This document shows positions 10,093 to 32,798 of a DNA stretch of 64,000 nucleotides, in pieces. Under the pieces are notes generated by a model. It saw only the letters and a program-made list of their open reading frames with translations, made no database searches and was not told the origin of the DNA. Numbering within the stretch: position 1 is the stretch's first letter; each line of letters opens with the position of its first letter. Origin of the DNA: Callorhinchus milii (Eukaryota); contig NW_024704771.1 in the NCBI RefSeq assembly GCF_018977255.1, positions 1,984,001 through 2,048,000 on the forward strand, given 5' to 3'. Position numbers and translations under genes: made by a program.

Positions 10093-10098
10093 AATAAA
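10093..10098 (+). terminator. Probable EGFL8 polyadenylation signal
   Basis: AATAAA 272 nt after the stop codon, followed by a T/GT-rich tract. Confidence 0.65.
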
Positions 10099-11096: not shown

Positions 11097-11472
11097 ATGC
11101 TAATCCTTGCATTTGATTGTGCGCCTCATCACGTCTTCAATAGATCTCAAAACACTTCGCAGAATATACTGTAAAGTGAATTGACTGTTATGTTTTGTGG
11201 GCGAAACGCAGCAGCCAATTGGCACAGCAGTGTCCCACAAACAGTCGTGGATGAAGTGACCAGATTTTCTTTTAATTCTTTTATTTTGAATGGATTGTTA
11301 TCCCCACAAAAGCATTCTGCCAATCCACTAACAACCAGGTTCCTATTCACTGCTGGGTAAACAGAGGCGTGTGGAGTAAGGAAACTTGCTCACTCACTGT
11401 TTCGCTCTGCCCGGAATCGAAACCAGGTCCTCTTGCTTGCGAGGCAAGAGCTCTAACCACTGAGCTACAGAG
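11097..11472 (-). mobile_element. tRNA-derived SINE, full length
   Basis: Family consensus on the minus strand. Confidence 0.75.
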
Positions 11473-11849
11473 CTCAAAAGGATAAAAATGGAGCGAGCGT
11501 CAGTCACAGAGAACACAATCCTCCAGTGCCGCCTACTGGTGATCGCTGCAGTTTCTCCCAGGCCGCGGAGAACACAGAGCAATGTTCTGAGGGCTTAAAA
11601 ATCTATTTTATGGAATCCTCCGTCCTCGGGTGGGAAAAGTGATGAAAGAGGAGGCCGCAGGTGTCCAGTAGTTCTGCGTGAACCCCACCCCTGGTAAACC
11701 AACAACAACAAATTACATTTATAGCCATCGCCTTTCACTTCAGAAGGATGTCTCCAGATGCTGGGCAATCGATGGTTCAGTCCTGAGCTGGGGATTGGAA
11801 TCAAAAGAGGTGGAGAGGGTTCAGCCTCCTCACCCCCTACCAACCTGCC

Positions 11850-12560
11850 CGCTCCCTCCACTCAGCGGGCTCTGGGCTGCTTCACGTCCCCCGCCTCGCT
11901 CGCCCCACCTTCGGTAGTAGGGTCTTCAGCCTCTCTGCCCCCATCCTTTGGAACTCCATCCCACAGTCCCTCCGCCTCACCCCCTCCCTTGCACCTTCAA
12001 GACCACTCTCAAGATCCGTCTTCTTCGACCATGCTTTTGGTCACCCTCCTACCCCTACCCTCCCTGCCCTCCACCCCTCCTGATCCCAACCACCAGCTCG
12101 GGTGCGGATCCCTGACGGTCCAGCACCTTGGGACGTCCTCCTGATGTGAAAGGCGCCATGTAAATAAAATTTGTTGTTGTTGTCTTGAGACAGGCTTTCA
12201 AGGAGGCAGGGGTGGGGAGAGGCAGAGAGATTCCAGGATGGAGTTCCAGAGGGTGGGGCAAAAAAGCTAAAGGTTTGACAACCAGTAGAGGAGACCACTG
12301 CCCACCGAGTGGACAGATTGCTGTCATTCATAGGTCGCAGAGGTAGGGAGGGCTTCAAAGGTAAAGCTCTCCCTACCTCTGCTCTGGGAGGTGTAAGGAG
12401 CCAGTGGAGCCGGGTGAGGCTGTGGGTGAAAAGGTCACGGAGCTTGGTACGGGAGAGGACATGAGCTGCAGACTTCTGAATAATCTGCAGTTTGTGGAGG
12501 GAAGAGCTGGGAAGTCTGGAGTTAGCGAAGTCGATCCTGGGCGTGAGGATGTGGGGGTTT
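11850..12560. mobile_element. Tail-to-tail L2 3' fragments
   Basis: Plus-strand tail ending at about 12180 abuts a minus-strand L2 fragment. Confidence 0.6.
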
Positions 12561-15059
12561 AATCCCAAATTCACTAACAAGGAGCTGACTGTTTTGCCTC
12601 AGGGCCCCTGCTTGCTTCATGCTTCCTGCCCTCCAGCTCAGCCATTCAATCGCCTCTCACAGTTTGCATCTCCTCTTAATTGAGCCGATTGTCACTCATC
12701 CCCACAAATCCTTTATTCCCAGGATCATGAGCTTCTGATGAAGTTCCTTCTTCCAAAATCACCTGCCCCTACCAACCTGCCCGCTGCCTCCACCCAGCGG
12801 GCTCTGGGCTGCTTCACATCCCCCCCGTCTCGCTCGCCCCACCATCGGCAGGCGGGCCTTCAGCCTCTCTGCCCCCAACCTCTAGAACTCCATCCCACAT
12901 TCCCTCCGCCTCGCCCCCTCCCAAGGCCCAGCTCGGGTCCAAATCTCTGACTGTGCAGCACCTCAGGATGTCCTCCCGAGGTGAAAGGCACCGGGTAAAT
13001 GTCGTTTGCAGTTGTCTTCCCATCGCACCACCAAGTTGCAAACTTTGCAAGGTGAGAGACCTGGGTTCGATTCCCGGCAGAGTGAAATCTTGCTCCACAA
13101 GCCCTGATAATAATCCCTCAAGAAAAAAAATACTAAATTAGTCATTTCAATCCACGGCTGTTTGTGAGACGCTGCTGTGTGCAGTTGGCTGCTGCATTTT
13201 GCCCATAAAAATACAGTTAATTCACTTTACAGCCTATTCTGTGAAGCGCTTTGAGACGTCTAGAAGGTGTGAAAAACGCTATATCAAATGCAAGGATTAT
13301 TATTATCATTATTAGGTTGTTTTTAAAAGAGTCCAGGCCTCAACCAGCCTTCCTGGTAACCCATTCAAGCTGCTGATTCCCCCTTTATAGAACTTTGCAA
13401 CGGAGAGAAGGCCAACGAGCTGATTGCCCCAGTGCCAGCTCTCTGCTGAGGTAGCCGTACAATGCATCACCTCATTCAAGATCTAATAAAATGGTGCAAC
13501 AGGCTCAAGGGGCTGAATGATGCCTTGCTAGCTTGGGCCCTGTGTTGTAATTCGCAGCGCTGGATGGGCTCAGTGATGTCCAATCTGTGGTGTGCTTGTT
13601 ACAAGCAACGTATGAAGAAACGTTGCTGTCTTGAGACGGATAAACTGCTAGGGTTTGTTAGAAAATAAATAGGTTGAACTGTAATACAAACCTTTTGACG
13701 AGTCTGCAGTGGCAAATCTATAACACACAAAGGTTAACAATGTGCTAGGGTTTATTGTTAGTCTGTGCGTTCATTTACTGCCAGGCTCCGAGAGGGATCA
13801 TGATCAACAGTACAGGATGTGGATGTTTATAGACACTGCTGTATTTCCCCAACAAACCTCCAATTTATGATGTTTGACTTTTAAATATTAAAGTAAAAAT
13901 TCCACAGTTGGAAAAGAGGAGAACGGAAATAAAAATGTTACCTCGAGGCTGGAGGGTCAACCTTACTTAGGAACAGGGGATCATTCAACCTAGGAAGTCT
14001 GTTCCACCAGTTTATAAAATTTTTAGATCTTTTAATCCCAATGCCTCTCACAATTGTGGAGTCCTCTAGCTCAGTGGTTAGAGCCTCGCAAGTGAGAGGA
14101 CCTGGGTTTGATTCCAGTCAGGGCAAAATGTTGGGCAAGTTTTCTTACTCCACACACCTCTGTCTACCTAGCAGTCAGTAGGAACCTGGTTGTTGGGCCT
14201 ACAGCCCATCTGCCCCACCCTATGGAACTCCATCCCACAGTTCCTTTGCCTCACCCATTCCCTTATTACTTTCAAAGCGTGTTTCAAAACTCTTCGATCG
14301 AGCCATCGGACGGTCACCCTCCTGACGTCTCAAACCGCTTCACAGATTATATTGTAAAGTCAATTGACTATATTTTGTAGGTGAAACGCGGCAGTCAAAT
14401 GCACACAGCAGTGTCCCACAATAGTGCCGTGGATTGAAGTGATCAATTTTATTATTATTATCATTATTGCTTTATTGAAGAAATTATTATTCCCGGAAAA
14501 ACAATCATTCAATCGACTAACAACCAGATTCCTACTGCTGGGTAACAGAGACGTGTGGAGTAAGGAAACTTGCTCAAAGTTTCGCCCTGCACTGGAGTCA
14601 AACCCAGTTACTTTTGTTTGCGAGGTGAGTGCCCCACAAACAGTCGTGGATTGAAGTGACCATTTTATTATTATTATACTTTAATTTATTTTTTTGAAGG
14701 TATTATTACCCCCAGTAAAGCAATCCGCCAATTGACTAACAACCTATTTATGCTGGGTAAGCAGAGGCGTGTGTGTGTGGAATAAGGAAACTTGCCCAAT
14801 GTTTCGACCTGCCCGGGAATCAAACCCAGGTCCTCTTGCCTGTGAGGCAAGTGCTCTAACCACTGAGCTACAGGACTTCAAGTAACTCAAGAGGGTGGAG
14901 GGGGCAACCTCAGAAACAGGCAGTATGTGTCTCTGAGACTCAGGCAACAACGTACAGCTCTAAGGGTCACAACAAAACCCAGGTATAAATTGGCCATTTA
15001 CTTAATGGTCGGCTGCATAAGGGGGTAAATTCAGAACCAATCTACTAAAACACTATTTC

Positions 15060-15280
15060 AGTGAGTGAACAGTGAACCTGTGGAACAGGCTCCCCAGGGA
15101 GACGGTTGAAGCAGGAAGTGTTGATTCCTTCAAACACAGATTAGATAGTTTTCTTTTAGGAAATAACATTATGGGATATAGTACAGGGGTAGTTTGTGTG
15201 CAAGTGACCACCAGGAAGGTGGAAGGCGAACTAGATGGACCTTGGGCTTTCTTTCATCTAGCATTTCTTATGTTCTTATT
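15060..15280 (+). mobile_element. CR1 3' fragment (different subfamily)
   Basis: NLWNRLPRETVEAGSVDSFKHRLDSF. Confidence 0.7.
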
Positions 15281-16229
15281 TCCCTGCAAATAGTCACTAC
15301 AGAAAATCCTGTGAAGCAGTTTTGAGACGTCTTCCTGGCGGTGCCAACAAAATATGCAGTCAATTCACTTTACAGTATATTCTGTGAAGAGCTTTGAGAC
15401 GTCTCAATGATAAGGCATTATATCAAATGCAAGGATTCATTATTATTATTAATAGAATTATACATATTCTATTAATATTATTATTTACAACACAGGGTGG
15501 TTGGTGCTGGATAATGGAGTGGAACAGCTTCTGGCAGCAAATGTTTTCCTGGACCTGGAATTCCCAGAACACATTAAACAGCACCATTTGCACGGCAAAC
15601 AATCACCGCATTATTTTTTTCAAATTAAATTTTCCATTCTTTAATCCTCGGCCTGGGACAGCCCGTTATATCCAGGAAGTTATGCATGAAGGAAAAAAAC
15701 ACAATTCACTTCTGCGTGCAAAGCGCATGCTGCACTATAATAAACAAAACAAAAAAAATAATAAATTGGACAGTTCAATCCGCAACTGTTTGTTGGACGC
15801 TGCTGTGCACAATCGGCTGCCGCATTTTGCCCACAAGTCAAGTCACTTGAGAGTATAGTCTGTGAAGCGCTTTGAGACGTCTCGAAGACTTGATAAGGTG
15901 CTGTATCAAATGCAAGGATTATTATTGCTGAGGACCTGAAAACATTGATCTGAGCTCCCCAATGGCTCAGTGAGTTTTCCCATTGTGCGTCGATTCCTCC
16001 AGGCAATTGAAAGTGTATCTGAATCACACGCAGCCTGTTCCAGGTCCCTCGCACTTCCCGCCCCACCCTTGATGGTTGCATCCTGTTATCTCATTCAATT
16101 GTCTATCAGTCATTAGTAGAAGCCTCCCAGTGAGAGATGGCAGGACTTCTAATTCTAACACCACAGCCCTCCTTTCAACATTTACATCCCAAGATCACAT
16201 CCACAGATTATCCAGAACTCTGCAGATTG

Positions 16230-16680
16230 TGTCCTCTCCTGCACCAGGCTCCACGACCCTATCATCCCCATCTTCACCCAACTCCACTGGCTTCCCATCA
16301 CACAGAGAATAAGGTTCAAAATCCTGGTTCTCATATTCAAAGCCCTCCATGGCCTCGGTCCCCCCCATCCCTCTGACTTCCTAAGCCTGCTTCATGTCAC
16401 CCGTCTTGTCCCCCCCACCATTGGCGGGTGAGCCTTCATCCACTCTGCCTTCAATCATTGGAACTCCATCCCGCAATCCTTTCACCTTGTTCCCAGTCTT
16501 GCCTCCTTTAAGACCCTCCTCTTCGACCATGCCTTCGGTCACCCTCGTACCCCTACTTTCCCCACTGTGCATCCCTCCTGATCCCAACCACTAGCTTGGG
16601 TGCGGATACCTGACTATCCAGTGCCTTGGGATGTCCTCCCAATATGAAAGGCACTTTACAAATATAATATTGTATTGTAT
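16230..16680 (+). mobile_element. L2 3' fragment
   Basis: LHWLPITQR-like segment and L2 tail. Confidence 0.65.
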
Positions 16681-16819
16681 TGAAAGATACGTGCCCTGAT
16701 CTAGAGACCACACACCGTGTCTCCCTCACTCCTGCCCGCAATATACATAAAAATCACTAAGATAATCCCAAACCAAAACAAAGGGATTTTAGCTTTGCCT
16801 CTCTTCACAGACCAGATGT

Positions 16820-17355
16820 TAGTGGTTAGGACTCAGCTAGAGACTGTTCAGTTCTGAGCACCACACATTAAGAAGCATGTCAAGGCTTTGGAGAGGGTAC
16901 AAAGGAGATTAACCAGGATGGTATCAGGAATGAGGGACTGAGTTATGAGAAGCTAGGATAATTCTCCTTGGAGCAGAAAAGATTACGGGAAGAATTAATA
17001 GTGGTATTCAAAATTATGAGGGGATTCAACAGCGTGAACAGAGAGAAATTGTTTCCACTGGTTGGTGGGTCAGTAACCCAAGGGCACAGATTTAAAATAG
17101 TTGTCAAAAGAAACAGAGGGGAGATGAGGAGAAATGTTTTCACAAGGCGAGTTGTTCGGATCTGGAATGCATTGCCTGAAAGAGTGGTGGAAGCTGATTC
17201 GATAACAGCTTTTACGAGAGAAGTAGATAGATATATAGGAATTTTTTCAGAGCTATGGGAAGAGCGCGGAGAAGTGGGATTAATTTGGATAGGCCTTTCA
17301 AAGATCCGGCACAGACACGATGGGCCGAATGGCCTCCTGTATAGTTCTAACATTC
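16820..17355 (+). mobile_element. CR1-clade LINE 3' end
   Basis: LERVQRR, LEQKRLREELIVVFKIMRGF, FTRRVVRIWNALPERVVEA; 3' UTR ...gggccgaatggcctcctgt. Confidence 0.85.
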
Positions 17356-17639
17356 TAAGAGTGATAGTGTGGACCTGGGGTGTAGACTGTGTGAACAATC
17401 TGTTAGGACCACTCCATTTGAGCCGATAGTCGCTGGCTCAGTTGAAGTCCCACTCTTACCTATGGGTCAGAAGATTGGTAGATTCAAGCCCCACATGGGA
17501 ACTCTGACCTCACAGTCCAGGCTCATGCTCCAGCGTATCCAATCTCCCAATAGATCGACTTCAAGATACTCACCTTCAAATCACTTCATTCCCTCGCACC
17601 TCCCCACCTCTACGAGCTGCTTACCCCCACTCCACCACC

Positions 17640-18790
17640 CAACAAAGTGGAGACAGTGAGAGAGAAAGGAATCAAACCAGCAAGGGCAGGTCCATAAAGA
17701 TTGAACAAAGCGGAGAGGTGGTGTATGAGGATGGAGTGGTCGACAGTGTCGAAGGCGGCAGAGAGGTCGAGGAGGACAAGGAGGCAGAGGGAGCCCTGAT
17801 GACAAATGTTCAGAATGTCATTAGTGACTTTGACCAGGGCTGTTTCTGTACTGTGGGCAGTGTGGAAGCCGGATTGGAGGGGTTCAAAAAAGGAATGGCA
17901 AGAAAGGAGCGAAGCTGGGAAGCGACAACTCATTCAAGCACCTTGGAGAGGAATGGGAGTTTAGAGATGGGGCGGTAGCTGGAGAGGAGGGATGGTCCAG
18001 GGAAGGTTTTTTCACGATGGGGGTGTGATGATGGCTGTTTTTAGAGGGATGGGAATTGAACCGATGGACATGGAGAGGTTGATGACATCAGACAAGAGAG
18101 GGGCCAGAAGGTGGAGCTGGGGGATGAGGAGAGAAGTGGGGATGGGATCGAGGGAGCAGGTGGTGGGCTTGAGTTTGCGAATGATGACGGTGAGGGAGGA
18201 GGGAGAGATAGGGTCAAAGGAGTATGGGGGGGGGGATGTGTGGGTCACGAGGGAGAGGTGATGTGGGGGTGGCGGTGGAGAGGGCAGAGGTGGCTGAGCG
18301 TATTCCCTTGATTTTGGATTCGAGGAAGTCCAGCATGTCCTCACAGTTGGAGTTTGAGGAGAGGATGGGCAAGCGTGAGAAGGTGGATGAAGGAGATGAT
18401 TTGTGGTGGAAAAGAGAAGCCGGGGGTTGTCCTTTGCTTCCAAGATAACCTTGGAGTAGAAGGAGGATTTGGCGGAGGCAAGAGTGCAGCGGTAGGCCTT
18501 GGTGTGGTGAAGCCAAATCTGCCAATGGACCATTAGTTTGGATTTGGTCCAGGCGCGTTTGGCAGCTCACACTTGTGCCTTGAGGGAACGGAGATGGCTG
18601 GTGAACCAGAGGGTTACGGGAGTATGAGGCAGCTCAGGAGGTGAGGGGGGGCAAGGTAGTCCAGAATGGAGGGGAGGCAGTTGTGGAGAAAAGAGAACGA
18701 GGAGGGGAGATCAGTCAGGGAGGGCCAGAGGTGATGGAGTTCAGATGACTCCAGGGCAGTGGAGAGGGAGGAATTTTTTTTCCACGGACA
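17640..18790 (-). mobile_element. Degenerate L2-clade LINE ORF2 (linker and RT N-half)
   Basis: [22 protein letters not shown]...[19 protein letters not shown] and KPTTCSLDPIPTSLL motifs; frameshifts and stops. Confidence 0.85.
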
Positions 18791-21524
18791 GTATGTGATG
18801 CTGGGGCATCAAGCTCCTCACCGGGGAAGTCCTCAGACCTCGAGTGGGCCTCGGCGCGGGTCCTGCTCGCCGCTGAATCCGCTCCAGGCGCCGGCTCTGA
18901 ACGCGATTCGAGTCGCAGCTCCGCTCCGGGCGCCTCGGGCCTTAATCCCAGGTAGGGTCGCCTCCATCTCCGACTCCATTCCAGGCTCCCCGGCCGCAGG
19001 AGACCTCGACCTCGAGCCCCAGGGCTCCCGATGTCCCACCCACAGCCACAGCTACAGTCGGCCCCAGGCGCCTCGTGAACCCAGCCTCCTGACCATCGCC
19101 ATCTTGTTCAGTGACGGGTGTAGATTAAGTGCTGGACTCCCTTCCACATAATAATAATAATAATAATAATAATATTGTTTGTATTTCTCCTGCATCAGTT
19201 GCCAGGTTTACCCTAACCAGACCCCCTACAGACCTGCTCTCTCTCTCCGCTCAGCAGGCTCCAGGCTGCTTCGCGGCCCCCGCCTCGCCCGGCCTTCCAC
19301 ACCATTGGCGGTCAGGCCCTCAGCCACTCTGTCCTCGCCCTCTAGAACTCCATCCCGCAGTCCCTACACCTCATCCCCTCCCTCGCCACCTTCAAGACCC
19401 TCCTCTTCGACCGCGCCTTTGATCACCCTCCTTGAGTGACCATTTTCCCTCTGTCTATTACCCCTGATGTGAGAAAGAGAATATTTGTGAGTGAGAGCAA
19501 GGGAGCACTTGGGGAAGAGAGTGAGAAGGGGTACTAGCAAGGTATGAGTTCCTTAGCAATGCATGAACAGTGGGGCCTGTGCAGAGTAAAATAAACAGTA
19601 GTTAGTGGGCGGATAATTTATTGAGTGATGACAACGCACTTCAGGTTTCTCAGACCAGCTGCTCTCCACGCTCTCCAGATGTGCAATAACATCCCAGAGC
19701 CTGACCTGACTGGGCTTTGCTCTCAGCCGTGTAAACACTGCTCCACACGGGCTGCTCATGGGAGTCCTCGCTGAGCTACAGAAAGCATGTAACAGGAAGG
19801 ATAAGGAAAACCTGGACAACTGCTACAGGAGAAGCCAAGAGAGAAACACACCGCACAAATTATAATCTTTGCATTTGATAGAGCGCCTTATCAAGTCTTT
19901 GAGACGTCTCAAAGTCGTGCGTTCGGGCACTTTTGGCTGTTCAGAGCCTTGGGACGTCCTCCTGACATGAAAGGCGCTTTACAAATGTAATTTTGTTGTT
20001 GACGTCTCAAAGCACTAACGGAATATACTGTCAAGTGAATCGACTGTATATTTTGTGGGCTAAACGCCACAGCCAATTGCGCACAGCTGCCTTCCACAAA
20101 CAGTTGTGGATTGAGTGAACAATTTATTTATTTTTTTTGAAGGGATTATTACCCCCAGAAAAGCGATCCGACAATCAACTAACAACCAGGTTCCTACTCA
20201 TGGCTGGGTAAACGGATGCGTGTGGAGTAAGAAAACTTGCCCAACATTTCATTTCTTTCCCGGGAATTGAACCCAGGTCTCTCGCTTGTGAGGCGAGTGC
20301 TCTAACCCCCGAGCTACACTATCCAAGCAGTGGTGCTGTATTTTATTCACATGAGTACAGAGCTCCAGGGAAATGTGCAGTAAATCAGTCTGTCAGACAC
20401 AGTGAATGGGAAGCAGAGCCAAGCTCTCTGTGGTAAGCCTGGTGGTCTGACACCTGAGATGGGAGCTCTGTACTCCAGGGCTCTGTGAGTGAGTAGCAGC
20501 TGAGTATTACTTCGGGGCTCTGTGAGTGACAGCACCAACACTGTTCCAGGCCTCTACTGGGAAATAGAGCTCCCGCTTTGCGGATATCGTCTGTTTCAGG
20601 TCCCTCCGCACTTCCTGCCCCACCATTGACAACTGGGAATCCAGCATCTCTGCCCCCACACTCTGGAAAAGCAATCCCTCTGCCTCAGCCCGTCTCTTGC
20701 CTTCAAGTCCCATCTAAAGACATTCCTCTTCCATCATGCCTTCGCCCACAAAATCTACGGACAATTCATTTTACAATATATCCTGTGAAGCGCTTTGAGA
20801 GGTATTGTTGACGTGATGAGGCGCTGTATCGAATGCAAGGATTATTATTATTAGTTAAAAGTAACTTTGAACTTTGATGCAAAGTATTGGCCTGAACATT
20901 TACTGACAGCTTTGAACAGCGGCAAAAGAAGTAAGAGCAGCAGGGGAGGGAAGAACAGTAATGTTAAGATAAGAGCTGGCCGTAACGTGTAAATCTAAGG
21001 GGATTGGGAGGGGATGTGGGGGTGACAACCCTGCTTTCAGATCACATCTCAAGACACTCCTCTTCGATTGTGCCTTTGGCTACGCTCCTACCCTCCAATC
21101 CCACATCCCATTCCCCCACCCCCAGCTTGGATCCAAATCCCTGACTGTCCAGCGCCTTAATAAGTAATAAACAATCCTTGTACCTGATATAGCGTATTTC
21201 AACTTGCAGACACCTCAAAGTGCTTCACAGAATACACTGTAAAGCAAATTGACTGTATATTTTGTCGGCGAAACATGGCAGCCAATTGCGCACAGCAGCG
21301 TCCCACAAACAGTCATGGGTTGAGTGACCAAATTATTATTTTATTTTTTTTCTTGAGGGATTATTATCAGACGTGTGGAGTAAGGAAACTTGCCCAAGGT
21401 TTCACCCTCACCTGCCAGGAATCGAACCCAGTTCCTCTCGCTTGCGAGGCGAGTGCTCTAACCACTGTGCTACAGGACTCCACACCTTGGATGTGATTCT
21501 GTATTGTATTGCGTAACTACCCAC

Positions 21525-21653
21525 ATCCTCCCTCAGCTCGGTCTGCGCCACCTCCAACATGACGCTGATGGCAGCATCCGTCTCAGGGGCCTGTTTTCAG
21601 CAGGTCCTCCTTAGAGATGGGCACCCAGTGATCTGACAGCCACTCCATCATAG
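21525..21653 (-). pseudogene. AGPAT1: AGPAT1-like pseudo-exon (equivalent of the MMEVLP...AISVMSEVAQT exon), internally deleted and frameshifted
   Basis: Minus strand ttttggcag|CT ATG ATG GAG TGG ... GTG CCC ATC TCT AAG GAG GAC CTG CTG (MMEWLSDHWVPISKEDLL), then after a frameshift DAAISVMLEVAQTELRED|gtgggt. Matches recalled human AGPAT1 MMEVLPGRCVPIAKRELL...DAISVMSEVAQTLLTQD|V with the same phase-1 acceptor and phase-0 donor. 129 bp here versus a recalled ~176 bp; in-frame TGA. Lies at the syntenic position between EGFL8 and RNF5. Confidence 0.8.
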
Positions 21654-21983
21654 CTGCCAAAACCCTGCAATAAGTCAATAGCATTGGAGATTGTAAAACC
21701 ACACACACACACACTGTCACATACACAAAAAAGTCACACACTCAGTCTCACACACAAACACAGTCACACAGTCACATACACAAACACACAGTCTCCACAC
21801 ACAAATATACACACAGTCACTCACACACACACAAACAAACAAGTTTATATATTTACTATGTTTATATAGTAAACTGTTATTATATACAACTCCTTATCTC
21901 CTCTCTGGTTCTCTTGACAATTATCTTAAATCTGTGTCCTCTGGTTACCGACCCACCCATCAGAGGAAACAGTTTCTCCCTTT

Positions 21984-22348
21984 GGAGTCCTGTAGCTCAG
22001 TGGTTAGAGCACTTGCCTCGCAAGTGGGAGGACCTGGGTTTGATTCCATGGCAGGGCAAAACAGTAGGCAAGTTTCCTTACTCCACACGCCTCTGATTGC
22101 CTAGCAGTAAGTAGGGTCCCGGTTCTTAGTCGATTGGCGGATCGCTTTTCCAGGACTAATAATTCCTTCCAAAAAAAAATGATAATTTGGTCACTCAATC
22201 CGTGACTGTTTGTGGGACGCTGCTGAGTGCAATTGGCCACTGCGTCTCACCGACAAAATACACGGTCACTCCACCTTATTACAGTATATTCTGTGAAGCT
22301 CTTTGAGACGTCTCGACAACACGATAAGGCGCTGTATCAAATGCAAGA
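21984..22348 (+). mobile_element. tRNA-derived SINE, full length
   Basis: Family consensus. Confidence 0.8.
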
Positions 22349-23523
22349 ACGAAGGAACGTTTCTTTCCTTGGTTAGAGTGCTTCAAGCTTATCCAGCATT
22401 TCCTCGCAACTCATCCTGGAAAACTGCTGGGATGGTGGAGGGGGGGGGTGGGGGTGGGTGTTGGGGAGGGAGGTGGTGTGGTGTGGTGGGGATTGCGGGG
22501 TTGGGGAGAGAATGTGTTTGCTCTCCTCCTGGCTACCTCTACGGGATGGGGAAGGGGGGCCCTATGGTGAGTCCTTAACTCTGGCTGGAAAAGATTCCAC
22601 TTCTAACATCTTGGTCCACACTTGAAACCCACCAAAGCCTGGAATGACTGTCCAGGCTGTATATTGTGTTAATTGGTCACAAATAAAATATAAACAAGAC
22701 CCACATAAGACTTAGCTACCACAGGCCACGGCATCTGCTAACGTTTCCCTGAACCGCTTGCCTGAATCCCAGGGAGGGAATAGTGGAATGTAACCAGACT
22801 CTCTGAGTGTAAAACAAAGAAAGCAGGCGGCGCACTTTGAGCTGTTATTTTATTTCAACGTCAGTTCAGCTGAAGCACCCGGTCAAGTGATTCAGAGTCT
22901 CAGGTTCTTCTGCGCTAAGAAGGGGACGTCAATCACCCAGGGCTCCTTAATGATGAGAATAAACCTCGCGTTTGATAAAGCGCTTCACGGGATATACTGT
23001 AAAGTGAATTCACTGTATATTTTGTGGGCGAAAACGCAGCAGTCAATTGCACACAGTCTGTCCCACAAGCAGTCGTGCATTGAGTGACCAATTAATTATT
23101 TTTTTGAAGGAATTATTATCCCCAGTAGGAACAACCCCGTTCATACTTACTGCTAGGTAAACAGAGGAGTGGGGAGTAACTTGCCCTGCCCGGGAATCAA
23201 ACCCAGGTCTTCTCGCTTGCGAGGCGAGTGCTCTAACCAATGAGATACAGGACTCCACGAGTAGCCTGCGAGCATCAGGTGAGGTACTGGAGAAAACCAG
23301 AGGAGAGGGAAGAATGTTTTGCGAATAAGGCAATCTTTTTTGAGGCAAACGTGGCAGCAAGTTCTAAGGCTCCATAAATGCGGCGTTATATCATTTGCAA
23401 GGATTATTATTATTATTATCATCATCAGTCTGAACTGTGAGCTCAAAGTCCCTGAAGTAGGGCTTGAACTCACAACCTTCCGATCGCCAGGTTAGAGTGC
23501 TGCCGTGTGTCGTCTGAGCCAGA

Positions 23524-23893
23524 CTGACACGTAATGTGTTTCTAGTTTAGTGATACTTTGCTGCCGCATGTTGGTCACAGGATAACAGTGACAGAACACA
23601 ATACGAGCCCCACTCACCAGTGTTTGAAAGCTGTTTCCTACCTGAAGCTTCTGGCGTTAAACGAAGTGTCAATTTATCCACTGAGCCTGAGCCTGGAGTC
23701 CAGCCAGAGCAGGAAGCCACACTGACACTGCTTGTAAATTTCAAGTCAAATCTCAACCAACACCTCCTGACAGGATGTCAACAGGCTCCCCCCCCCCCCC
23801 CCCCCCCACAGAGACCTGACTGACTGTCACAGAACACCCCCCTCTTCCCCCCCCACCACTCACCTCAAAATGGAATTGCTCCCAGTATTTCAC
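23524..23893. repeat. Non-TE block duplicated at 56141-56511 (same orientation); similarity extends into the adjacent L2 fragment
   Basis: About 370 bp, visibly more than 90% identical. Confidence 0.9.
23811..23893 (-). pseudogene. AGPAT1: AGPAT-like exon relic (preceding exon, degenerate NHQS catalytic motif)
   Basis: Minus strand VKYWEQFHFEVSG (cf. AGPAT KYxxGxRFEVxG, same spacing), then after a G-run and frameshift VFCDSQSGL (cf. VVSNHQSSL). Lies 2.2 kb 5' of the 21525-21653 relic, in the expected exon order. Confidence 0.55.
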
Positions 23894-24308
23894 TTTAATG
23901 CTGGTGGTTGGGATCAGGAGGCGTGGAGTGCACTGGGTGGGAGTGGGAGGGTGACCGAAGGCATGGTCGAAGGGGAGGGTCTTGAGACGGGTCTTGAAAG
24001 AGGTAAGATAGGGGGTGAGGTGGAGGGATTGCGGGATAGAGTTCCAGAGTGTGGGGGCAGAGATGCTGAATGACCGACTGGCAATGGTGGGTTGGGAAGT
24101 GCGGGGGACCGCCGAGCGCAGGGAGTGGACAGGCTGATATGGGGTTAGGAGGTCGGAGAAGTAGGGGGGAGCAAGACTATGGAGGGCTTTGAAGGTGAGA
24201 ACTTACACTACCCGAAGAATCCACCATCACCACAAAGTGATCCACCATCACACCAACTGACCCACTATTGCTGAACCAATGGAATCCCTGTCACCCTAAG
24301 GGAACTTG

Positions 24309-24683
24309 GGAATCCTGTAGCTCAATGGTTAGACCATTCGCCTTGCAAGTGAGAGACCTGGGTTTGATTCCCGGCCAGGACAAAAAGTTAGGCAAGTTTC
24401 TTTACTCCACTTTTCTATTTACCCAGCAGTAAGTAGGAATCCAGTTGTTAGTCAATTGGCGGATCACTTTTCCAGGGGAAATAATTACTTCAAAAATAAT
24501 AATAACAAATTGGTCACTTCAATCCGCGACTGTTTGTGGGACGCTGCTGTGCGCAATTGGCTGCTGCGTTTCACCCACAAAATATACAGTCAATTCACTT
24601 TACAGTGTGTTCTGTGAAGCGCTTTGGGACGTCCTCCCGACGTGAAAAGCGCTATATCAAATGCAAGGATTATTATTATTATT
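24309..24683 (+). mobile_element. tRNA-derived SINE with L2-type (CTCCC loop) tail
   Basis: Family head and body; tail gggacgtcctcccgacgtgaaaagcgct followed by (ATT)n. Confidence 0.8.
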
Positions 24684-25676
24684 ACAGTATATTATGTGAA
24701 GCGCTTTGAGGCATCTCGAAGACATGATAAGGCGCTGTAAGGCGTAAAGTAAACTGACTCACATCTCGCAGTATCTCTCTCTCACACACACGCACACACC
24801 AAAAGTGCAGAGCCTGGTTCACGGCTATCGGTCAGTACCTGACACACACTAAGATAAGAGTTAGCAGACGTACAGCAGACTGGCTCATATGTCTTGTTCA
24901 GTAACTGACACACACTCACACATGCTCCAAGTGTTGAGCAAACTCTATACATTTAAGTTCATGTGCTGATGTGATTGTGGAATTAACGTTCACAGAAAAT
25001 AACAGAATCCCTGATTGTAGCAAGTACTGGGCGGAAGATGATAATAATAATAATAATAATAATAGTAATAATAATCCTTGCATTTGATACAGAGCCTTAT
25101 CACGTCTTTAAGATGCCTCAAAGCGCTTCACAGAATATACTGTAAAGTGAATTGACTGTATATTTTGTTTGCGAAACGCAACAGCCAATTGTGCACTGCA
25201 GCGTCCCACAGACAGTCGTGGATTAAGTGATCAAATTCTTTTTTTTGAAGGGCTTATTACACCCAGATTAGTGGAATCCTCCTGTGTGGGGGTGGCGTGG
25301 GGAGTTTGACACAATGCTACATTTGCATTCAACAGCCTCTGTCTGCAGCGGTGAGGAGGCTGGAAATTCCTATTGATAAGCCAGTTAGTTATCAGCACGC
25401 ACATCGCTGTTGGGGGACAGGCATCGAGGAGCCAATAAATAACTGACCCGGAGATAATAATAATCCTTGCATTTGATATAGCGTCTTATTGATTGTATGT
25501 TTTATGGGCGAAACGCGGCAGTCAATTGTGCACAACCTTGTTCCTACAAACAGTCGTGGACTGAGTGACCACATTATTATTATTTGGAAGCGATTATTAC
25601 CCCTGGAAAAGCGATCCACCAATTGACTAACAATCGGGTTCCTACTTACTGCTCGGTAAACAGAGGCGTGCTGAGT

Positions 25677-25999
25677 AATAATAATATTAATAATAATAAT
25701 AATAATCCTTGCATTTGATATAGCGCTTTTCACGTCAGGAGGACGTCCCAAAGCGCTTCACAGAACACACTGTAAAGTGAATTGACTGTATATTTGTGTG
25801 CGAACGCGGCAGCCAATTGCGCACAGCAATGTCCCACAAACAGTCGTAGATTGAAAATGACCAATTTATTATTACTTTGTTTTTTTTGGAGGGATTATTA
25901 TTAGGCATGAAACTTGCCCAAGGTTTCGCCCTGCCTGGAATTGAACTCAGGTCTCTCGCTTGCGAGGCGAGTGCTCCAACCACTGAGCTACAGGACTCC
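25677..25999 (-). mobile_element. tRNA-derived SINE, young deleted subfamily
   Basis: Nearly identical to 35156-35478 and 40308-40533. Confidence 0.8.
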
Positions 26000-28547
26000 A
26001 ACGTGGAAGGTTATTAGTGTGTGGGAGTGTTGGGGGGGCTATCAGATTGAGGGTAGGACGTCTGGTGGAAAGGTTACTGGATTTTTGGTATGCGGTAAAT
26101 GAACAACTTTATCTGGGGGATTGTTGGTCAGGACATCGGGAGAAACTCCCTTCTTTCAAATAGTACCTGAACAGGCAAATGGGGCCTTGAGATTAATACA
26201 TCACACGGAGAATAAGTTCTAAATTTTGGAAACCTCCTGAATTCAGTTTTAATTTTTTCCATGGAAAGAACCGGGCTCCAAATTAGGCAGAAATCTTTGC
26301 AATCTGCTGTGCGCAATTGGCTGCTGTGTTTGGCCCACAAAATATGCACTCAATTCACTTCACAGTAACCTCTGCAAAAGCACGTTGAGACGTCTAGAAG
26401 ACATGATGAGGCGCTGTGTCAAATGCAAGGATGATTTATTATTATTGTAATCTCAAATTTGAAGACGAAAGGTTTTAGGGTGAAGCAGGAGGGATCTGGG
26501 GCTCAGGGACAAGAGGCCAACGCTCATTTATCATCGCCATCGGAAGCTAAAGGAAAGGATAGAGTTCAGATTGTACACAGTGGCCAGTCACGTGGGAGGA
26601 GGAGGAGGCCGCCTTGCTCAAACCATCTCATGGCTGAGGGAGCTGTGGTCCCATGAGATAAGAGGCCTTTGAGATGACATGAGTGCAGGCTGTGTGTGTT
26701 GCTGCGTTGCTGAGGATCAGATTACCAAAGCATTGACCTGGGGCCTTCTCCAAAAGGCAGCGTGGGAGGAATCCCGCCATCCATTGCTGTGATCTCTTTC
26801 CAGGGTAGAGAACAGATGCCTCTCTCTGCTGAAACCCATTTCATTAGTACACAACAAGTCTGTCTCTGGAGCAAACCGCAGGACAAACCCACTACCCACG
26901 TGGTTTGCGTCCATAAACTCAGACCCTGAGTTAGACGAGGCATCAACAACAACAACTTGCATTTATACAGTGTCATTTGGGCTGGGTAGCGATCCAGAGC
27001 GCGCCTAATAATAATCCTCCAAAAAAACAAAACAACAATAAATTGGTCATTTTCAATTTTCAATCCATGACCTTTTGTGGGGACACTGTTGTGCGCAATT
27101 GGCTGCCGTGTTCGTCCACAAATATACAATCAATTCACTTTACAGTATATTCTGTGAAACGCTTTGGGACGTCTAGAAGATGTGAAAAGCGCTATATCAA
27201 ATGCAAGGATTATTATTATTATTATTGACAATGGCGGAGCACGATGCTAGGCCGGGGGGAGGTGACTGGAGGCACGGTTGAATGGGAAGGTCTTCAGGCG
27301 AGTCTTGGAAATAGAGAAGGAGCAAGGCGGAGGGATGGAGGAAGAGGGTTCCAGGGTTTCGGGGCGCAGTGGCTGAAAGCGCGGCCACCGAAGGTGGAAC
27401 ATAGGGCACGGGGCACATGCAGGAGGCCGGAGCCAGTTATGTCTCAAAATGCTTCACACAATATACTGTAAAGTAATGGATTGTATATTTGTGGGTGAAA
27501 CGTGGCAGCCAATTGCGCACAGCAGTGTCCTACTGAAGTGAGCAATTTCTTACTGTTTTTTTTTCTTCAGGGATTATTATCAGGCGTATGGAGTTAGGAA
27601 ACTTGCCCAAGGTTTTGTCCTCACCTGCCGGGAATCCAACTCAGGTCTCTCACTTGCGAGGCGAGTGTTGTAACCACTGAACTACAGGGCTCCACAATGC
27701 AACTTCAGGGCTGTTTGTAGGACAGATGTGCACAAATTAGCTGCTGAGTTTGTCTACCAAATGTAGTCACTCCATTTTACAGTAAAATCCTATGGTTTTG
27801 TGACAAAGTGCATGATTACCACCAAATCAGCCAGAGCTGGAATCAAACAGCACAGGTCCAAAGAACATTGCACTTGTAAGCAAAACCACGATAAATGGTG
27901 ACATGTTATAACACAGGGCAGCGTGGGAGGAAAATAGACCATTACTATGGTCTGTTTCCAGGGTAAAGAACAAATGCTTCTCCGCTGATTTGTTGGGCAA
28001 GTTTCCTTACTCCACACGCCTTTGTTTACCCAGCAGTAAGTAGGAACCTGGTTGTTAGTTGATTGGCGGATCGTTTTTCCAGAGATAATGATTCCTTCAA
28101 AATAATAATAAGAAATTGGTCACTTCAATCCACAACAGTTTGTGGGATGCTGCTGTGCGCAATTGGCTGCCGTATTTCACACAGAAAAAACAGTCACTAC
28201 ACATTGCAGTATATTCGTGAAGGGCTTTGAGATGTCTCAAAGATGTGGTAAGGCACTATATCAAATGCAAGGATTATTATTATTAGACAGTACTTGTGTA
28301 AAAAAATCACTATTTTCCTGGCTCCAGGTAGCCCAAGACACATCCTCTGTTGCCTAATGTAACGCCAGTGCAAGCAGCCCCCACTGCGAGCGGGTCAGAG
28401 TCAGCACATCTACATGCTCAGAGAACAAGAACTTGTTTGGGATTTTCTTCGTTTCCTAAGAATAAAAGCAGCAGAATTGGGGGGGAGAAAGCTGGGTAAG
28501 GAGACAAACAGGGCAAAGAGTCATGTAATGTCAGAACATAAATACCC

Positions 28548-28896
28548 TTGCATTTGATGCAGCGCCTTATTACGTCTTCGAGACATCTCAAAGCTCTTCA
28601 CAGAATTTTATCGTAAAGTGAGTTGACTGTATCTTTTGTGGGCGAAACGGGGCAGCCAATTGCACACAGCAGCGTCCTGTAAACAGTCGTGGATTGAAGT
28701 GACCAGCTTATTTTTTTTTGAAGAAATTATTATCCCAGGAAACGCGATCCGCTAATCGACTAACAGCTGGGTTTCTAGGTAAACAGAAGTGTATGGAGTA
28801 AGTGAACTTGCCCAACATTTCACCCTGCCCGGGGATCAAACCCAGGTCCTTTTTCATGCGAGGCGAGTGCTCTAAGCACTGAGCTACAGGACTCCA
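28548..28896 (-). mobile_element. tRNA-derived SINE, full length
   Basis: Family consensus. Confidence 0.8.
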
Positions 28897-30202
28897 GGAC
28901 AGGCTGAGACCATCATCTTTGTAGGAAGCATCTCACAATGGCCTTCTGTTTTACTGCACATCACTTTTTCGTCCTTCGCACATACGGATCATCGCCTCAC
29001 TGTGTGGGAGACAGACACCAGGCCAGGGCAGCCTGTTGCCAGACAACGAACAATTCTGCTTTGTAGCTAGCTTGTCTCATTCCTGCTCCATTCCACAGAG
29101 ACTGTAATCACTGACAACATCCAACAGTTCTGCGTGACACTGATATCAAACACGCTGCTGCGTTGAGTAATTAAGAGGCTTGTGGCATTGGAACTTGATT
29201 ATAATAATCCTTGCATTTGATGCAGCGCCTTATCACGTCTTCCAGATGTCTCAAAGCGCATCACAGAACAGACTGTAAAATGAATTGATTGTATTTTGTG
29301 GGCGAAACGAGGCAGCTAATTGCGCCACAGCAATGTCCCACAAACAGTCGTGGATTGAGGGATCAAATTATTATTTTTGTTTAAAAGGATTTACTTCCCC
29401 CGAAAAAGCGATCCGCCAATCGACTTGCAAGCGGGATCCTATTTACTGCCAGGTAAGCAGAGGCGCGTGGAGTAACGAAGCTTAACTTGACCAACGTTTC
29501 CACCTGATGGGAATCGAACCCAGTTCTCGTTTGCTCGAACCAGAGCTACAGGACTCCTGTGACAGACACTGGCAGTACACATGCTGTGAAACAGCGCCAT
29601 CTGATGTCCAGCGATAATTATTTCACCAACGGCTCCAACCTTTACCCAACTTCAAGAGAATTTCATCACCAACCTTTTGGTGAACAATCCCATTGACTCG
29701 AATTATTTATTACTACAGTCGGTGTCAGCTGCTGTCTCCCCGCTTGTGCCTTGTAGGATTCTAATATTGATCCTGTCTTCTTTTCCCAGGCAATATTTAG
29801 ACACTATTTGCCTTGCTCAGAGGAAGCCTGAGGCATCCACACAGTTCAGTCGGCGGCATAAGAACATTAGAATTTGCAGCCAAAAGAGGACCAAGGTCCA
29901 TCTGGTTCCTTCCACCATCCTTCCAGTCAATCCACTTTACTGTGTATCCTGTGAAGTGCTTTGAGACGTGTCGAACATGTGATTATTATTATTATTAGTA
30001 TTATCCTGGCAATCACTTGAAATGTTGTGACCCAAACTCTATAGTGTATCCTAAGATAATATTTCCTAGCAGAAATCTATCTAATTTGTTCTTGAAACCA
30101 ATGACATGTTCCCTAGGGATCCTGTTCCTTAAGTTTACTACTCGCTCACTGAAGTAGTTAACGCAGATTCGTTCTGAATTTACTGCCTTCAATCGCAGGC
30201 CA

Positions 30203-30630
30203 TATCCTCACCTACAAGGCCATTCACGGCCTCGCTCCTTACTATCTCTTCGACCTACTATCCCCCTACCTACCTGCCCATACCCTCCGTTCCTCTGGCT
30301 CTGGTCTGCTCCACATCCCCCGCCCCAACCGCCCTACCATCGGTGGCCGGGCCTTCAGCCTCTCAGCCCCCAGGCTCTGGAACTCTATCCCCCAGTGCCT
30401 TCGCCGCTTCCTCCCTTTGCTCCTTCAAGGCCGGTCTCAAGACCTTTCTCTTCGACCGTGCCTTCAGCTCCCCTCTCGACTCTCTACCCCCTCCTCGCCC
30501 CCTCCCTTCCCTCCCCTTACCCTGACCATTTCCCCCACTGCTCGAGTCCCGACCAAACTGTCCAGCGCCTTGGGACGTCCTCCCGACGTGAAATGCGCTC
30601 TATAAATGCAATCTTGTTGTTGTTGCTGTT
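30203..30630 (+). mobile_element. L2 3' fragment, very similar to 1762-2080
   Basis: Long near-identical stretch shared with the copy in the EGFL8 intron; stem-loop tail. Confidence 0.8.
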
Positions 30631-32329
30631 CCATTCCCGGCAGGACAAAGTGCTTCCTCACTCCACACGCCTCGGTTTACCCGGCAGTCAGTAGGAACCC
30701 AATTGTTAGTCGATTGGCGGATCGCGTTTCCGGAGGTAACAATGATCCCTTCAGAAAATAATAATAATAAATCAGTCGCTTCAATCCACGACTGTTGTGT
30801 TGGGCGCTGCTGTGCACAATTGGGCAGCCGTGTTTCGCCCGCAAAATATATAACAGTCGCTTCGCTGTACAGTGTATTCTGGGAAGCGCTTTGAGATGCC
30901 TGAAGAGGCTCTGTATCGAATGCGAGGATGGTTTTGTCCGGCACTCACTTCGGGTTCTCCACTTGGCGATCCTTCACGCCACACAGAGTGGGGGGGGCGC
31001 GGTGGGGTGGGGTGGGGGGAACACAGCCATTAAAAAATCGCCATTTTGCAGAAGTATTTGAAGGGACGGGGAGCTGAGCTGTTTTAGAGGAGAAGCAGAA
31101 CGACTCCGGGAGTAACAAACAGACATCCACCATCAAACCTACCAAATAAACCACAGATTAAACCATAAATCAAGAGGAATGCCGGGGGTCTGCGGACCAG
31201 GGGACAGTCGGCCAACATCCCGCCAACATTTTAAGTGGAGAAACTTATCGCTAAAGTCACTAAAATATTAAGCGAGAAATGAGAGCCGAGAGAACAGCGA
31301 CAGCCCACCCCCCCCGATTGGTGTGGGTGTGGAGTGGGCGGGGCACTGGTGGGAGAGCAACAACAACAACAAGAACAGATGACATTTGTTATTGCCTTTC
31401 ACACCAGGACGTCCCAAGGCGCTGAATAACAACAACAGCAGCAACACAGCACCCCTCGTGCAGGATAGCGCTTGACAGTGACAGAGCCCAAGACTGAGCT
31501 GGGGGGAGGGGGAGGGGGGGAGGGGTGGTGACCGTAGGCACAGTCCAAGAGGAAGGTCTTTAGGCGTAACCTGAAGATGGGGAAGGAAGGGGCATGGTGG
31601 AGGGATACGGGTAGGGCGCTCTCTTAGCACAGTCTTCTGCCCACCTTGCCAGTTTATGCCCACAGTTATTTTAAGCTCTGGGACAACAACAACAACAACA
31701 AATGTGTCTGTTTACCGAGGAGTAAGCAGGATGGTTGTTAGGCGATTGGCGGATCGCTTTCCAGAAGTAATAATCCCATTAAAAAAAACAATTTGGTCAC
31801 TCAATCCACGACTGTTTGTGAGACACTGCTGTGTGTAATTGGTTGTTGCAGTGTGCTGTTCGAAACTGATTCCAGCTCTGGCTGATTTGGTGGCAATCGT
31901 GCACTTGGTCACAAAACCACAGGATTTTACTGTAAAGTGGAGTGACTCATTTGGTAGACAAACTCAGCAGCTAATTTATGCACAGCCGTGTCCTACAAAC
32001 CGCCCTGAATTTGCATTGTGGAGCCCTGTAGCTCAGTGGTTGGAGCACTCGCCTCACAGGCGAGAGAAACCTGGGTTCGGTTCCCGGCGGGTCAGGTTAG
32101 GCAAGTTTCCTAACTAATTGCCACAAATGTACAGATCAATTCACTTTACAGTATATTATGTGAAGCGCTTTGAGGCGTCATATCAAATACAAGGATATTA
32201 TTATTATTATAATGTGTCCACTCTCCTGTCACTGGACTCATGTCCACTCAAACAACAGATCCTGGGAAAACATCGTTGATTGACAGGCCTTGTGACACGC
32301 CCATTCATTGATAAACACAGGAAGGCTCT

Positions 32330-32798
32330 GACACCGCCCTCTCCCGCCCACAGCCTCACGATAGCCAATCAAATCAGACTGATCACGCCCGTAATTATTG
32401 ACGTTCCGCTCTACCATTGACAAACGGGCGAACTACCACGATCAGCCAATAAGAATACAGATCCCGCCTCCACGTGGCGCTGATCGACGTCCATTGCAGC
32501 CAATCGCCAGGCGCGGTTGTGTGACGTGCCCACAGCCGCTTCAACCACCTTTCCCCACCCTCGCCGCACGCGATGATTGACGCAATCAAAGACCAATCAA
32601 GGTGGCGTTCTCAGGCTCAGGCCCGCCCTCGCCCCGCCCCGCTGGGTAATTGATGGAGCCGCTGACCAATCCAGGCGGCGCTGCTCGCAGTGGCACTCCC
32701 GCCCCCTGCCCGCGGGGCCCGGATGTTCCCGGTTGGCCGGGGTGACGGACGGGCGGGCGGGCGGGAGGGGGCGGGGCCGGGCTTGTTATTGTTCAGTC
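32330..32798 (+). promoter_or_regulatory. CpG-island promoter of RNF5 with five CCAAT boxes and GC boxes
   Basis: CCAAT at 32365, 32446, 32500, 32593 and 32666; CACGTG at 32471; TGACGTG at 32522; Sp1-type GC boxes around 32621-32640 and 32767-32778; high CpG density extending into exon 1. Confidence 0.75.

What the first reader, a model, noticed from the sequence alone, without database searches (positions are those of the whole stretch)
21525..21653. Pseudogenised AGPAT1 (lysophosphatidic acid acyltransferase alpha) at its ancestral MHC position
This is invisible in the ORF track. The minus-strand exon has correct AGPAT splice phases and two conserved blocks (MMExLxxxxVPIxKxxLL and AISVMxEVAQT) joined across an estimated 47-bp deletion. 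The deletion removes the GVIFIDR substrate-binding motif and shifts the frame to a stop. No intact AGPAT1 exons were found between EGFL8 and RNF5. Inference: lineage-specific loss of AGPAT1 (or relocation of the functional copy), which is notable because the gene is regarded as a housekeeping lipid enzyme in mammals; AGPAT2 might compensate.
Basis: partly seen in the sequence, partly recalled or inferred. Interest (0 to 1): 0.8.

Follow-up and report, generated by a model that had tools for sequence, protein, structure and literature searches.

The report
Dead AGPAT1 exon in elephant shark
Between the EGFL8 and RNF5 genes of the elephant shark lies one decayed, silent exon of the lipid-synthesis gene AGPAT1, broken by a real 47-base deletion. 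This shows the gene died at its ancestral position, an ordinary kind of gene loss but in a gene that mice need.

Summary
The window is Callorhinchus milii, assembly GCA_018977255.1.

- **The relic.** On the minus strand, 21653-21525 is a 129-nt remnant of the 176-nt third coding exon of AGPAT1. Its two ends match a mammalian AGPAT1 exon at 52% and 68% amino-acid identity, and the splice acceptor and donor sit at the homologous positions.
- **Significance.** None of 1,800 shuffled queries reached the combined score of the two matches.
- **The lesion.** The 47 nt in between are missing. That removes motif II (AGVIFIDRKR), shifts the frame and gives a TGA at 21585-21583.
- **Not an assembly error.** Contigs from four independent read sets span the junction with no gap.
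- **Silent.** Eight RNA runs hold none of the relic's words.
- **Nothing else survives.** No other AGPAT1 exon or motif (I, III, IV) is detectable in the window. NCBI calls no gene in the parts of the EGFL8-RNF5 interval I could see (9.8-19.8 and 22.8-32.8 kb). The interval is mostly interspersed repeats.
- **Synteny.** Order and orientation, EGFL8(+), AGPAT1 relic(-), RNF5(+), match the mammalian MHC class III region.

The scan's other note on this window, a "catalytic-motif exon relic" at 23.8-24.2 kb, is contradicted: that NHQ belongs to a repeat family.

I could not test whether a working AGPAT1 exists elsewhere in the genome, or whether the loss is shared with sharks and rays. Verdict: a single-copy gene that died in place, of moderate interest.

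The parts
21525..21653 (-). Relic of AGPAT1 coding exon 3: 129 nt where the intact exon has 176 nt.
   Evidence: tblastn with the mammalian exon L006:14256-14429:-. Nucleotide alignment. Unique within the window.
21589..21651 (-). Block 1, MMEWLSDHWVPISKEDLLKTG, homologous to residues 1-21 of the exon (MMEVLPGRCVPIAKRELLWAG).
   Evidence: 52% amino-acid identity; 68% nucleotide identity.
21582..21588 (-). Deletion junction: 7 nt stand where 54 nt encode SAGLACWLAGVIFIDRKR in mammals. The in-frame TGA is at 21585-21583. A G>A polymorphism on the plus strand lies at 21587.
   Evidence: The SNP is seen in runs X1 and X3. Motif II sequence comes from PMC6922471 Table 2.
21525..21581 (-). Block 2, TDAAISVMLEVAQTELRED, in the +1 frame relative to block 1, homologous to residues 40-58 (TGDAISVMSEVAQTLLTQD).
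   Evidence: 68% amino-acid identity; 70% nucleotide identity.
21654..21655 (-). Splice acceptor AG (ttttggcag|CT ATG ATG), at the same position and phase as the mammalian tag|GG ATG ATG.
   Evidence: splice contexts printed.
21523..21524 (-). Splice donor GT (GAG GAT|gtgggt), at the same position as the mammalian CAG GAC|gtgagt.
21408..21500 (-). tRNA-derived SINE, its tRNA-like head beginning 49 nt 3' of the relic's donor (element boundaries approximate). It is one of five tRNA-like SINE heads in 20.2-24.8 kb.
   Evidence: Rfam tRNA hit at 21411-21476. Very high word depth in the read sets.
1..9821 (+). EGFL8 orthologue (NCBI name 'EGFL7'). The gene starts 872 nt before the window. It lies tail-to-tail with the relic.
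   Evidence: record 1983128-1993821; window position = record minus 1984000. Tree.
32799..52911 (+). RNF5, head-to-head with the position where the AGPAT1 5' end would lie.
9822..32798 (.). The EGFL8-RNF5 interval. NCBI calls no gene in 9.8-19.8 kb or 22.8-32.8 kb. At least 56% of it is interspersed repeats with other copies in the window. Apart from the relic it contains no AGPAT1-like sequence.

Best explanation
This is the last recognisable remnant of the elephant shark's AGPAT1 gene, which died in place (a unitary pseudogene).

**Shown.**
- The ancestral arrangement EGFL8(+), AGPAT1(-), RNF5(+) is kept.
- Only coding exon 3 survives, and it is itself disabled. A 47-nt internal deletion removes the lysophosphatidate-binding motif II, shifts the frame by +1 and brings a TGA into frame.
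- The exons carrying motif I (NHxxxxD, catalytic), motif III (EGTR) and motif IV are no longer detectable.
- The interval is now filled mainly with SINE, LINE and other repeats.
- The relic is not detectably transcribed.

**Inferred.**
- The locus has no function.
- The gene stayed under protein-coding constraint for much of its history, because third codon positions are the most diverged. It was then inactivated and eroded by deletions and transposon insertions.
- Which lesion came first is unknown.
For: - **Homology and splice sites:** both ends of the AGPAT1 exon match, and acceptor and donor sit at the homologous positions.
- **Significance:** 0 of 1,800 shuffles reach the observed two-block score.
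- **Coding signature:** identity to the mammalian exon by codon position is 32/40, 30/40 and 21/40.
- **Family signature lost:** the intact mammalian exon alone hits Pfam PF01553 at E = 1.4e-7. The relic gives nothing.
- **Synteny, tool-derived:** a mammalian locus has PRRT1, PPT2, EGFL8(+), AGPAT1(-). A reptile has EGFL8(+) followed by an AGPAT1(-) last exon. The window's EGFL gene groups with these EGFL8 genes at 100/99 support. RNF5 is 100% identical to NCBI's C. milii RNF5 over the queried exon-1 stretch.
- **Gene order in the literature:** PMC1309616 and PMC3903589.
- **The deletion is real:** four read sets span it without a gap.
- **Silence:** zero depth in two RNA runs, and a 0.00 word share in eight RNA runs against 0.72-1.00 in genomic runs.
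- **No gene model and no other exons:**
Against: - Only one of six coding exons is recognisable. That is odd if the inactivation was recent, and it requires large deletions or replacement by transposons.
- The comparison used a mammalian and a partial reptilian AGPAT1. A chondrichthyan AGPAT1 might reveal weaker relics.
- AGPAT2 could not be fetched, so 'AGPAT1 rather than AGPAT2' rests on synteny, on the strong match to AGPAT1, and on my own recollection of the AGPAT2 sequence.
- The RNA evidence comes from assembled contigs, which drop rare transcripts.
Confidence: 0.87

Rival explanations
1. The ancestral copy is dead, but a working AGPAT1 survives elsewhere in the C. milii genome, through relocation or an older duplicate. 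In that case there is no loss of function for the animal.
For: Not excluded. No whole-genome or transcriptome search was possible with the tools.
Against: - At 80% likeness no RNA or DNA contig other than the locus itself aligned to the relic, but an old duplicate would be more diverged than that.
- The scan's notes on this genome mention AGPAT1 only in this window.
- Relocation of single-copy genes is rare (general knowledge).
Confidence: 0.25
2. Chance resemblance of junk DNA to AGPAT1.
For: Each block is short (19-21 residues), and Pfam and PDB searches found nothing.
Against: - 0 of 1,800 shuffles reach the chained score.
- The blocks are the two ends of one exon, in order, on the expected strand, between the expected neighbours.
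- They are flanked by AG and GT at the homologous positions.
- Third-position divergence exceeds that at positions 1 and 2.
Confidence: 0.01
3. An assembly or sequencing artefact: the real exon is intact.
For: None.
Against: Contigs from four separate samples cover 21457-21736 with 0 gaps. Two of them carry a SNP at 21587, so they do not all carry the assembly's haplotype.
Confidence: 0.01
4. The relic exon persists because it was exapted, for example as part of a non-coding RNA or a regulatory element between EGFL8 and RNF5.
For: It is the only exon that survived in a heavily eroded interval.
Against: - No transcription in eight RNA runs.
- A polymorphism sits within it.
- The orthologous sequence was not found in the ray or sawfish flanks available.
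- Survival of one ~130-nt piece by chance is plausible.
Confidence: 0.05

Closest known systems
Mammalian AGPAT1 (LPLAT1, LPAAT-alpha), coding exon 3
   Same: - Same exon boundaries and phase.
- Same flanking genes and orientation.
- 24 of 40 retained residues are identical, including MME.L, VPI.K..LL and AISVM.EVAQT.
   Different: - 47 nt are missing, including motif II.
- The frame is shifted and a stop is in frame.
- All other exons and motifs I, III and IV are absent.
- It is not transcribed.
Unitary pseudogenes, meaning lineage-specific deaths of single-copy genes left at the syntenic locus. GULO in primates is an example from general knowledge.
   Same: A disabled remnant at the conserved position, with neighbours intact and no gene model.
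   Different: Erosion is more extreme here, with one exon of six left. Absence of a second copy has not been shown.
AGPAT2 next to EGFL7 (the 9q34 paralogous region in human, from general knowledge)
   Same: The same tail-to-tail EGFL-AGPAT arrangement and the same protein family.
   Different: - The window's EGFL gene groups with synteny-anchored EGFL8, not with the EGFL7-like clade.
- RNF5 is adjacent.
- The exon begins MME, whereas AGPAT2 motif I ends ...GL, so its exon starts with L (PMC6922471 Table 2).
- The rest of the AGPAT2 exon could not be compared with tool-derived sequence.

Membership tests
AGPAT/LPLAT acyltransferases (Pfam PF01553), as a functional member | Motif I, NHxxxxD (catalytic, acyl-CoA binding) | tested here: not met
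   There is no NH[QRTK]SxxD in any of the six frames. The best matches to VSNHQSSLDLLGM are at chance level. The 'NHQ' at 23918-23901 belongs to a repeat.
AGPAT/LPLAT acyltransferases (Pfam PF01553), as a functional member | Motif II, AGVIFIDRKR (lysophosphatidate binding) | tested here: not met
   It falls inside the 47-nt deletion, and no match exists elsewhere in the window.
AGPAT/LPLAT acyltransferases (Pfam PF01553), as a functional member | Motifs III (FPEGTR) and IV (VPIVPIV) | tested here: not met
   No PEG[TS]R or [VI]P[VI][VI]P was found. Motif scores are at chance level. tblastn with exons D and E gave nothing.
AGPAT/LPLAT acyltransferases (Pfam PF01553), as a functional member | Significant match to the PF01553 profile | tested here: not met
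   The relic pieces, and the relic joined with X at the break, gave 0 families at E <= 10. The intact mammalian exon gave E = 1.4e-7.
AGPAT1 orthologue (by descent) | Sequence homology to an AGPAT1 exon with conserved intron positions and phase | tested here: met
AGPAT1 orthologue (by descent) | Conserved synteny and orientation: EGFL8(+), AGPAT1(-), RNF5(+) | tested here: met
   Gene order is also given in PMC1309616 and PMC3903589.
AGPAT1 orthologue (by descent) | Closer to AGPAT1 than to AGPAT2 | tested here: inconclusive
   No AGPAT2 sequence could be fetched. Support comes from synteny, the EGFL8 tree, and the first exon residue (M in AGPAT1, L in AGPAT2; PMC6922471 Table 2).
Unitary pseudogene | Disabling lesions confirmed in independent data | tested here: met
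   Frameshift plus TGA. Four read sets confirm the sequence.
Unitary pseudogene | Not expressed as mRNA | tested here: met
   The evidence is contigs only, so rare transcripts could be missed.
Unitary pseudogene | No functional copy elsewhere in the genome | not testable with these tools
   There is no whole-genome search of C. milii.

The most novel reading that the evidence does not exclude
Elephant sharks, and perhaps all cartilaginous fishes, lack any functional AGPAT1 and are natural knockouts of an enzyme whose loss in mice causes neurological, reproductive and fat-storage defects. There is a hint of a wider loss. No gene is called within 10 kb upstream of RNF5 in a sawfish, a horn shark and a white shark. 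In an electric ray no gene is called and no AGPAT1 signal is found within 10 kb downstream of EGFL8.
Probability: 0.5. Interest if true: 0.45.

Novelty: new member of a known kind. Interest (0 to 1): 0.33.

Why it matters
AGPAT1 makes phosphatidic acid, the precursor of glycerophospholipids and triacylglycerol. In mammals it is ubiquitously expressed. Knockout mice are born below Mendelian frequency, with nervous-system, reproductive and fat-storage abnormalities (PMC8753187).

A vertebrate that has lost it at the ancestral locus shows that the enzyme is dispensable in some lineages, presumably through AGPAT2-5. This fits with two earlier reports: no zebrafish orthologue was found in a 2005 survey (PMC1309616), and AGPAT1 was silent in all chicken tissues tested (PMC6726641).

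It also refines the gene map of the chondrichthyan MHC class III region, and it gives annotators a reason for the missing gene model. The value is modest, because lineage-specific gene loss is common.

Tried and rejected
- **Searches with the relic itself.** Pfam and PDB searches with the pieces, and with the pieces joined by X, gave nothing. The word-indexed protein search with the joined relic found no candidate.
- **RNF5 orthologues.** I used them to reach neighbouring AGPAT1 genes in elasmobranchs. No gene was called within 10 kb upstream in Pristis, Heterodontus or Carcharodon, and DNA was available only for Pristis. That DNA gave no AGPAT1 signal.
- **EGFL8 route.** The word search returned only the window's own gene. 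The exhaustive search gave orthologues. Two were transcript contigs without neighbours, two were not on record, one gave only the last AGPAT1 exon of a reptile, and one gave the full mammalian gene that I used.
- **Narcine.** The EGFL8 downstream flank has no AGPAT1 signal.
- **The 23.8-24.2 kb 'catalytic motif' relic (rejected).** The region is a repeat with a 93% copy at 56.4-56.7 kb. The peptide STPPDPNHQ recurs in at least five other copies. Its alignment score to exon B is reached by 11 of 300 shuffles.
- **The exon-B-like hit at 27853-27936 (rejected).** It beats 300 shuffles only narrowly, was picked after the fact, needs an 8-residue gap and overlaps repeats.
- **Organisms B and C.** Their contigs matched only the SINE and the microsatellite at 80% likeness.
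- **Literature.** No paper links AGPAT1 with Callorhinchus or sharks beyond figure legends.

Full report
**Identity of the window.**
- RNF5 exon 1, at about 32.8 kb on the plus strand, is 100% identical to NCBI's Callorhinchus milii RNF5.
- The locus fetched for that protein, from GCA_018977255.1 scaffold MU249860.1, is 100% identical to window 22799-62911. Window position therefore equals record position minus 1,984,000.
- The upstream gene is a 288-aa EMI/EGF protein that NCBI names EGFL7. It ends at window position about 9,821.
- In a maximum-likelihood tree it groups at 100/99 support with EGFL8 proteins that I anchored by synteny, and apart from an EGFL7-like clade. The anchors are a mammal with PRRT1-PPT2-EGFL8-AGPAT1 and a reptile with EGFL8 followed by an AGPAT1 last exon.
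- RNF5 starts at 32,799.
- The order PPT2-EGFL8-AGPAT1-RNF5-AGER-PBX2 is the mammalian class III order (PMC1309616; PMC3903589).

**The observation.**
- The minus strand reads ttttggcag|CT ATG ATG GAG..., giving MMEWLSDHWVPISKEDLLKTGP and then TGA at 21585-21583.
- In the next frame it reads TDAAISVMLEVAQTELRED, ending at 21525 and followed by gtgggt.
Its third coding exon is 2 + 174 = 176 nt, preceded by tag and followed by gtgagt.
- tblastn of that exon against the whole window gave two top hits: residues 1-21 at 21651-21589 (52% identity) and residues 40-58 at 21581-21525 (68% identity). They are collinear on the minus strand, with a joint E-value of 0.001.
- Residues 22-39 (54 nt) are represented by 7 nt, so the deletion is 47 nt and shifts the frame by +1.
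- The lost residues, SAGLACWLAGVIFIDRKR, contain motif II as tabulated in PMC6922471.
- None of 1,800 shuffled versions of the exon produced a collinear two-block score as high as the observed 46.9 bits. The best reached 42, and the 99th percentile was 36.5.
- Identity to the mammalian exon by codon position is 32/40, 30/40 and 21/40. That is the pattern expected of sequence that once evolved under protein-coding constraint.
- The intact mammalian exon alone hits Pfam PF01553 at E = 1.4e-7. The relic gives nothing, in pieces or joined with X.

**It is not an artefact.**
- Logan contigs from four samples of one 2025 study (X1-X4, unique-sequence word depth about 6-13) each contain a contig covering 21457-21736, with no gap and 0-1 mismatches.
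- Two samples carry G>A at 21587, which is CCC to CTC in the dead frame. They therefore do not all carry the assembly's haplotype.

**It is silent.**
- At 80% likeness, two RNA runs of the same organism have zero depth across 21506-21692. The one exception is a spurious 21-nt joint.
- An index look-up with the unique 211-nt block found it at a 0.72-1.00 word share in four genomic-type runs and at 0.00 in eight RNA runs from four studies.
- This is contig-level evidence, so very rare transcripts are not excluded.

**The rest of the gene is gone.**
- No NHxSxxD, PEGTR, FxDR or VPxxP pattern occurs in any frame.
- Scores for the four published motifs of AGPAT1 and AGPAT2 are at or below those of shuffled motifs.
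- tblastn with exons A, B, D, E and F, and with a reptile exon F, gave only low-complexity or chance hits.
- NCBI calls no gene between 9.8 and 19.8 kb or between 22.8 and 32.8 kb.
- At least 56% of the 23-kb interval has other copies within this window alone. It includes five tRNA-derived SINE heads in 4.6 kb, one of them 49 nt from the relic's donor, and LINE reverse-transcriptase ORFs at 17.6-18.6 kb.
- The relic sits in a 404-nt unique block.

**Two candidate second relics were examined and rejected.**
That NHQ lies in the peptide STPPDPNHQ, which is the translation of an interspersed repeat with at least five other copies in the window. The region has a 93% identical copy at 56.4-56.7 kb. 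Its alignment score to exon B is matched by 11 of 300 shuffles.
- An exon-B-like stretch at 27853-27936 narrowly beats the shuffles. It was selected after the fact, needs an 8-residue gap and overlaps repeats.

**Interpretation.**
- The simplest reading is a unitary pseudogene. AGPAT1 was present at its ancestral place in an ancestor of the elephant shark and evolved as a coding gene. It was then inactivated and largely erased by deletions and transposon turnover, leaving one damaged exon.
- Which lesion came first cannot be said.
- The relic's 60% identity to a mammalian protein (24 of 40 residues), with no further stops or indels inside the blocks, suggests limited neutral decay. C. milii is a slowly evolving genome (general knowledge), so I do not attempt a date.

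**Scope of the loss.**
- I could not search the whole genome, so a relocated or duplicated functional copy remains possible. I put this at about 25%.
- For elasmobranchs there are only hints. No gene is called within 10 kb upstream of RNF5 in Pristis, Heterodontus or Carcharodon. No gene and no tblastn signal are found within 10 kb downstream of EGFL8 in Narcine or upstream of RNF5 in Pristis.
- Intergenic distances in these large genomes may simply exceed 10 kb.

**Comparison with what is known.**
- By descent this is AGPAT1. As an enzyme it fails every defining feature of the family.
- Whether it is closer to AGPAT1 than to AGPAT2 was not tested with tool-derived AGPAT2 sequence. It rests on synteny, on the EGFL8 tree, and on the first exon residue (M in AGPAT1, L in AGPAT2; PMC6922471).
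- AGPAT1 is ubiquitously expressed in mammals, and its knockout in mice is severely deleterious (PMC8753187).
[quoted passage not shown] Dispensability outside mammals is therefore not unprecedented.
- I found no paper reporting the state of AGPAT1 in Callorhinchus or other cartilaginous fishes.

**Verdict.** This is a new instance of a familiar phenomenon, lineage-specific death of a single-copy gene. It is of moderate interest, and its wider significance depends on a whole-genome search and on a survey of other chondrichthyans.

Noticed in passing
The NHQ lies in the peptide STPPDPNHQ, which recurs at 12079, 34170, 49373, 51333 and 58771. The region has a 93% identical copy at 56.1-56.8 kb.
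   Followed up: yes
window 1-9821 (+): NCBI names this C. milii gene EGFL7. By tree (100/99 support) and by synteny with RNF5 and the AGPAT1 relic it is the EGFL8 orthologue, although its C-terminus ([19 protein letters not shown]) looks EGFL7-like.
   Followed up: partly
window 21587: A G>A polymorphism (CCC to CTC in the dead reading frame) is present in two of four population samples. This fits a lack of constraint.
   Followed up: partly
window 27853-27936 (-): A weak similarity to AGPAT1 exon B: YFPPTLPCVITCHH...QCSLDL against HFPPSQPYVVVSNHQSSLDL. It lies on the right strand and in the right order, but it needs an 8-residue gap, lacks the catalytic NHxxxxD and overlaps repeats. Probably chance.
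   Followed up: partly
window 55742-62911+ (+), L001:32943-40113: A V-set immunoglobulin gene (277-aa product, running off the fetched locus L001 at window 62911) follows RNF5, where mammals have AGER. A published analysis holds that AGER exists only in mammals (PMC3903589). The scan has a separate note on this gene.
   Followed up: no
window 33.3-34.2 kb and 52.1-53.0 kb: Long proline-rich or Gly/Arg-rich tandem repeats give open frames of 150-300 aa on several strands and frames inside RNF5: in intron 1 and next to the exon encoding [15 protein letters not shown]. They look like expanded minisatellites rather than genes.
   Followed up: no
L002 (Pristis), L008 (Narcine), and the Heterodontus and Carcharodon gene lists: No acyltransferase gene is called within 10 kb upstream of RNF5 in three elasmobranchs, or within 10 kb downstream of EGFL8 in an electric ray. 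No AGPAT1-like sequence is found in the two flanks for which DNA was available. AGPAT1 may be absent from this position in elasmobranchs too.
   Followed up: partly
window 17610-18570 (-): LINE reverse-transcriptase-like ORFs ([13 protein letters not shown] motif) lie in the middle of the EGFL8-RNF5 interval.
   Followed up: no
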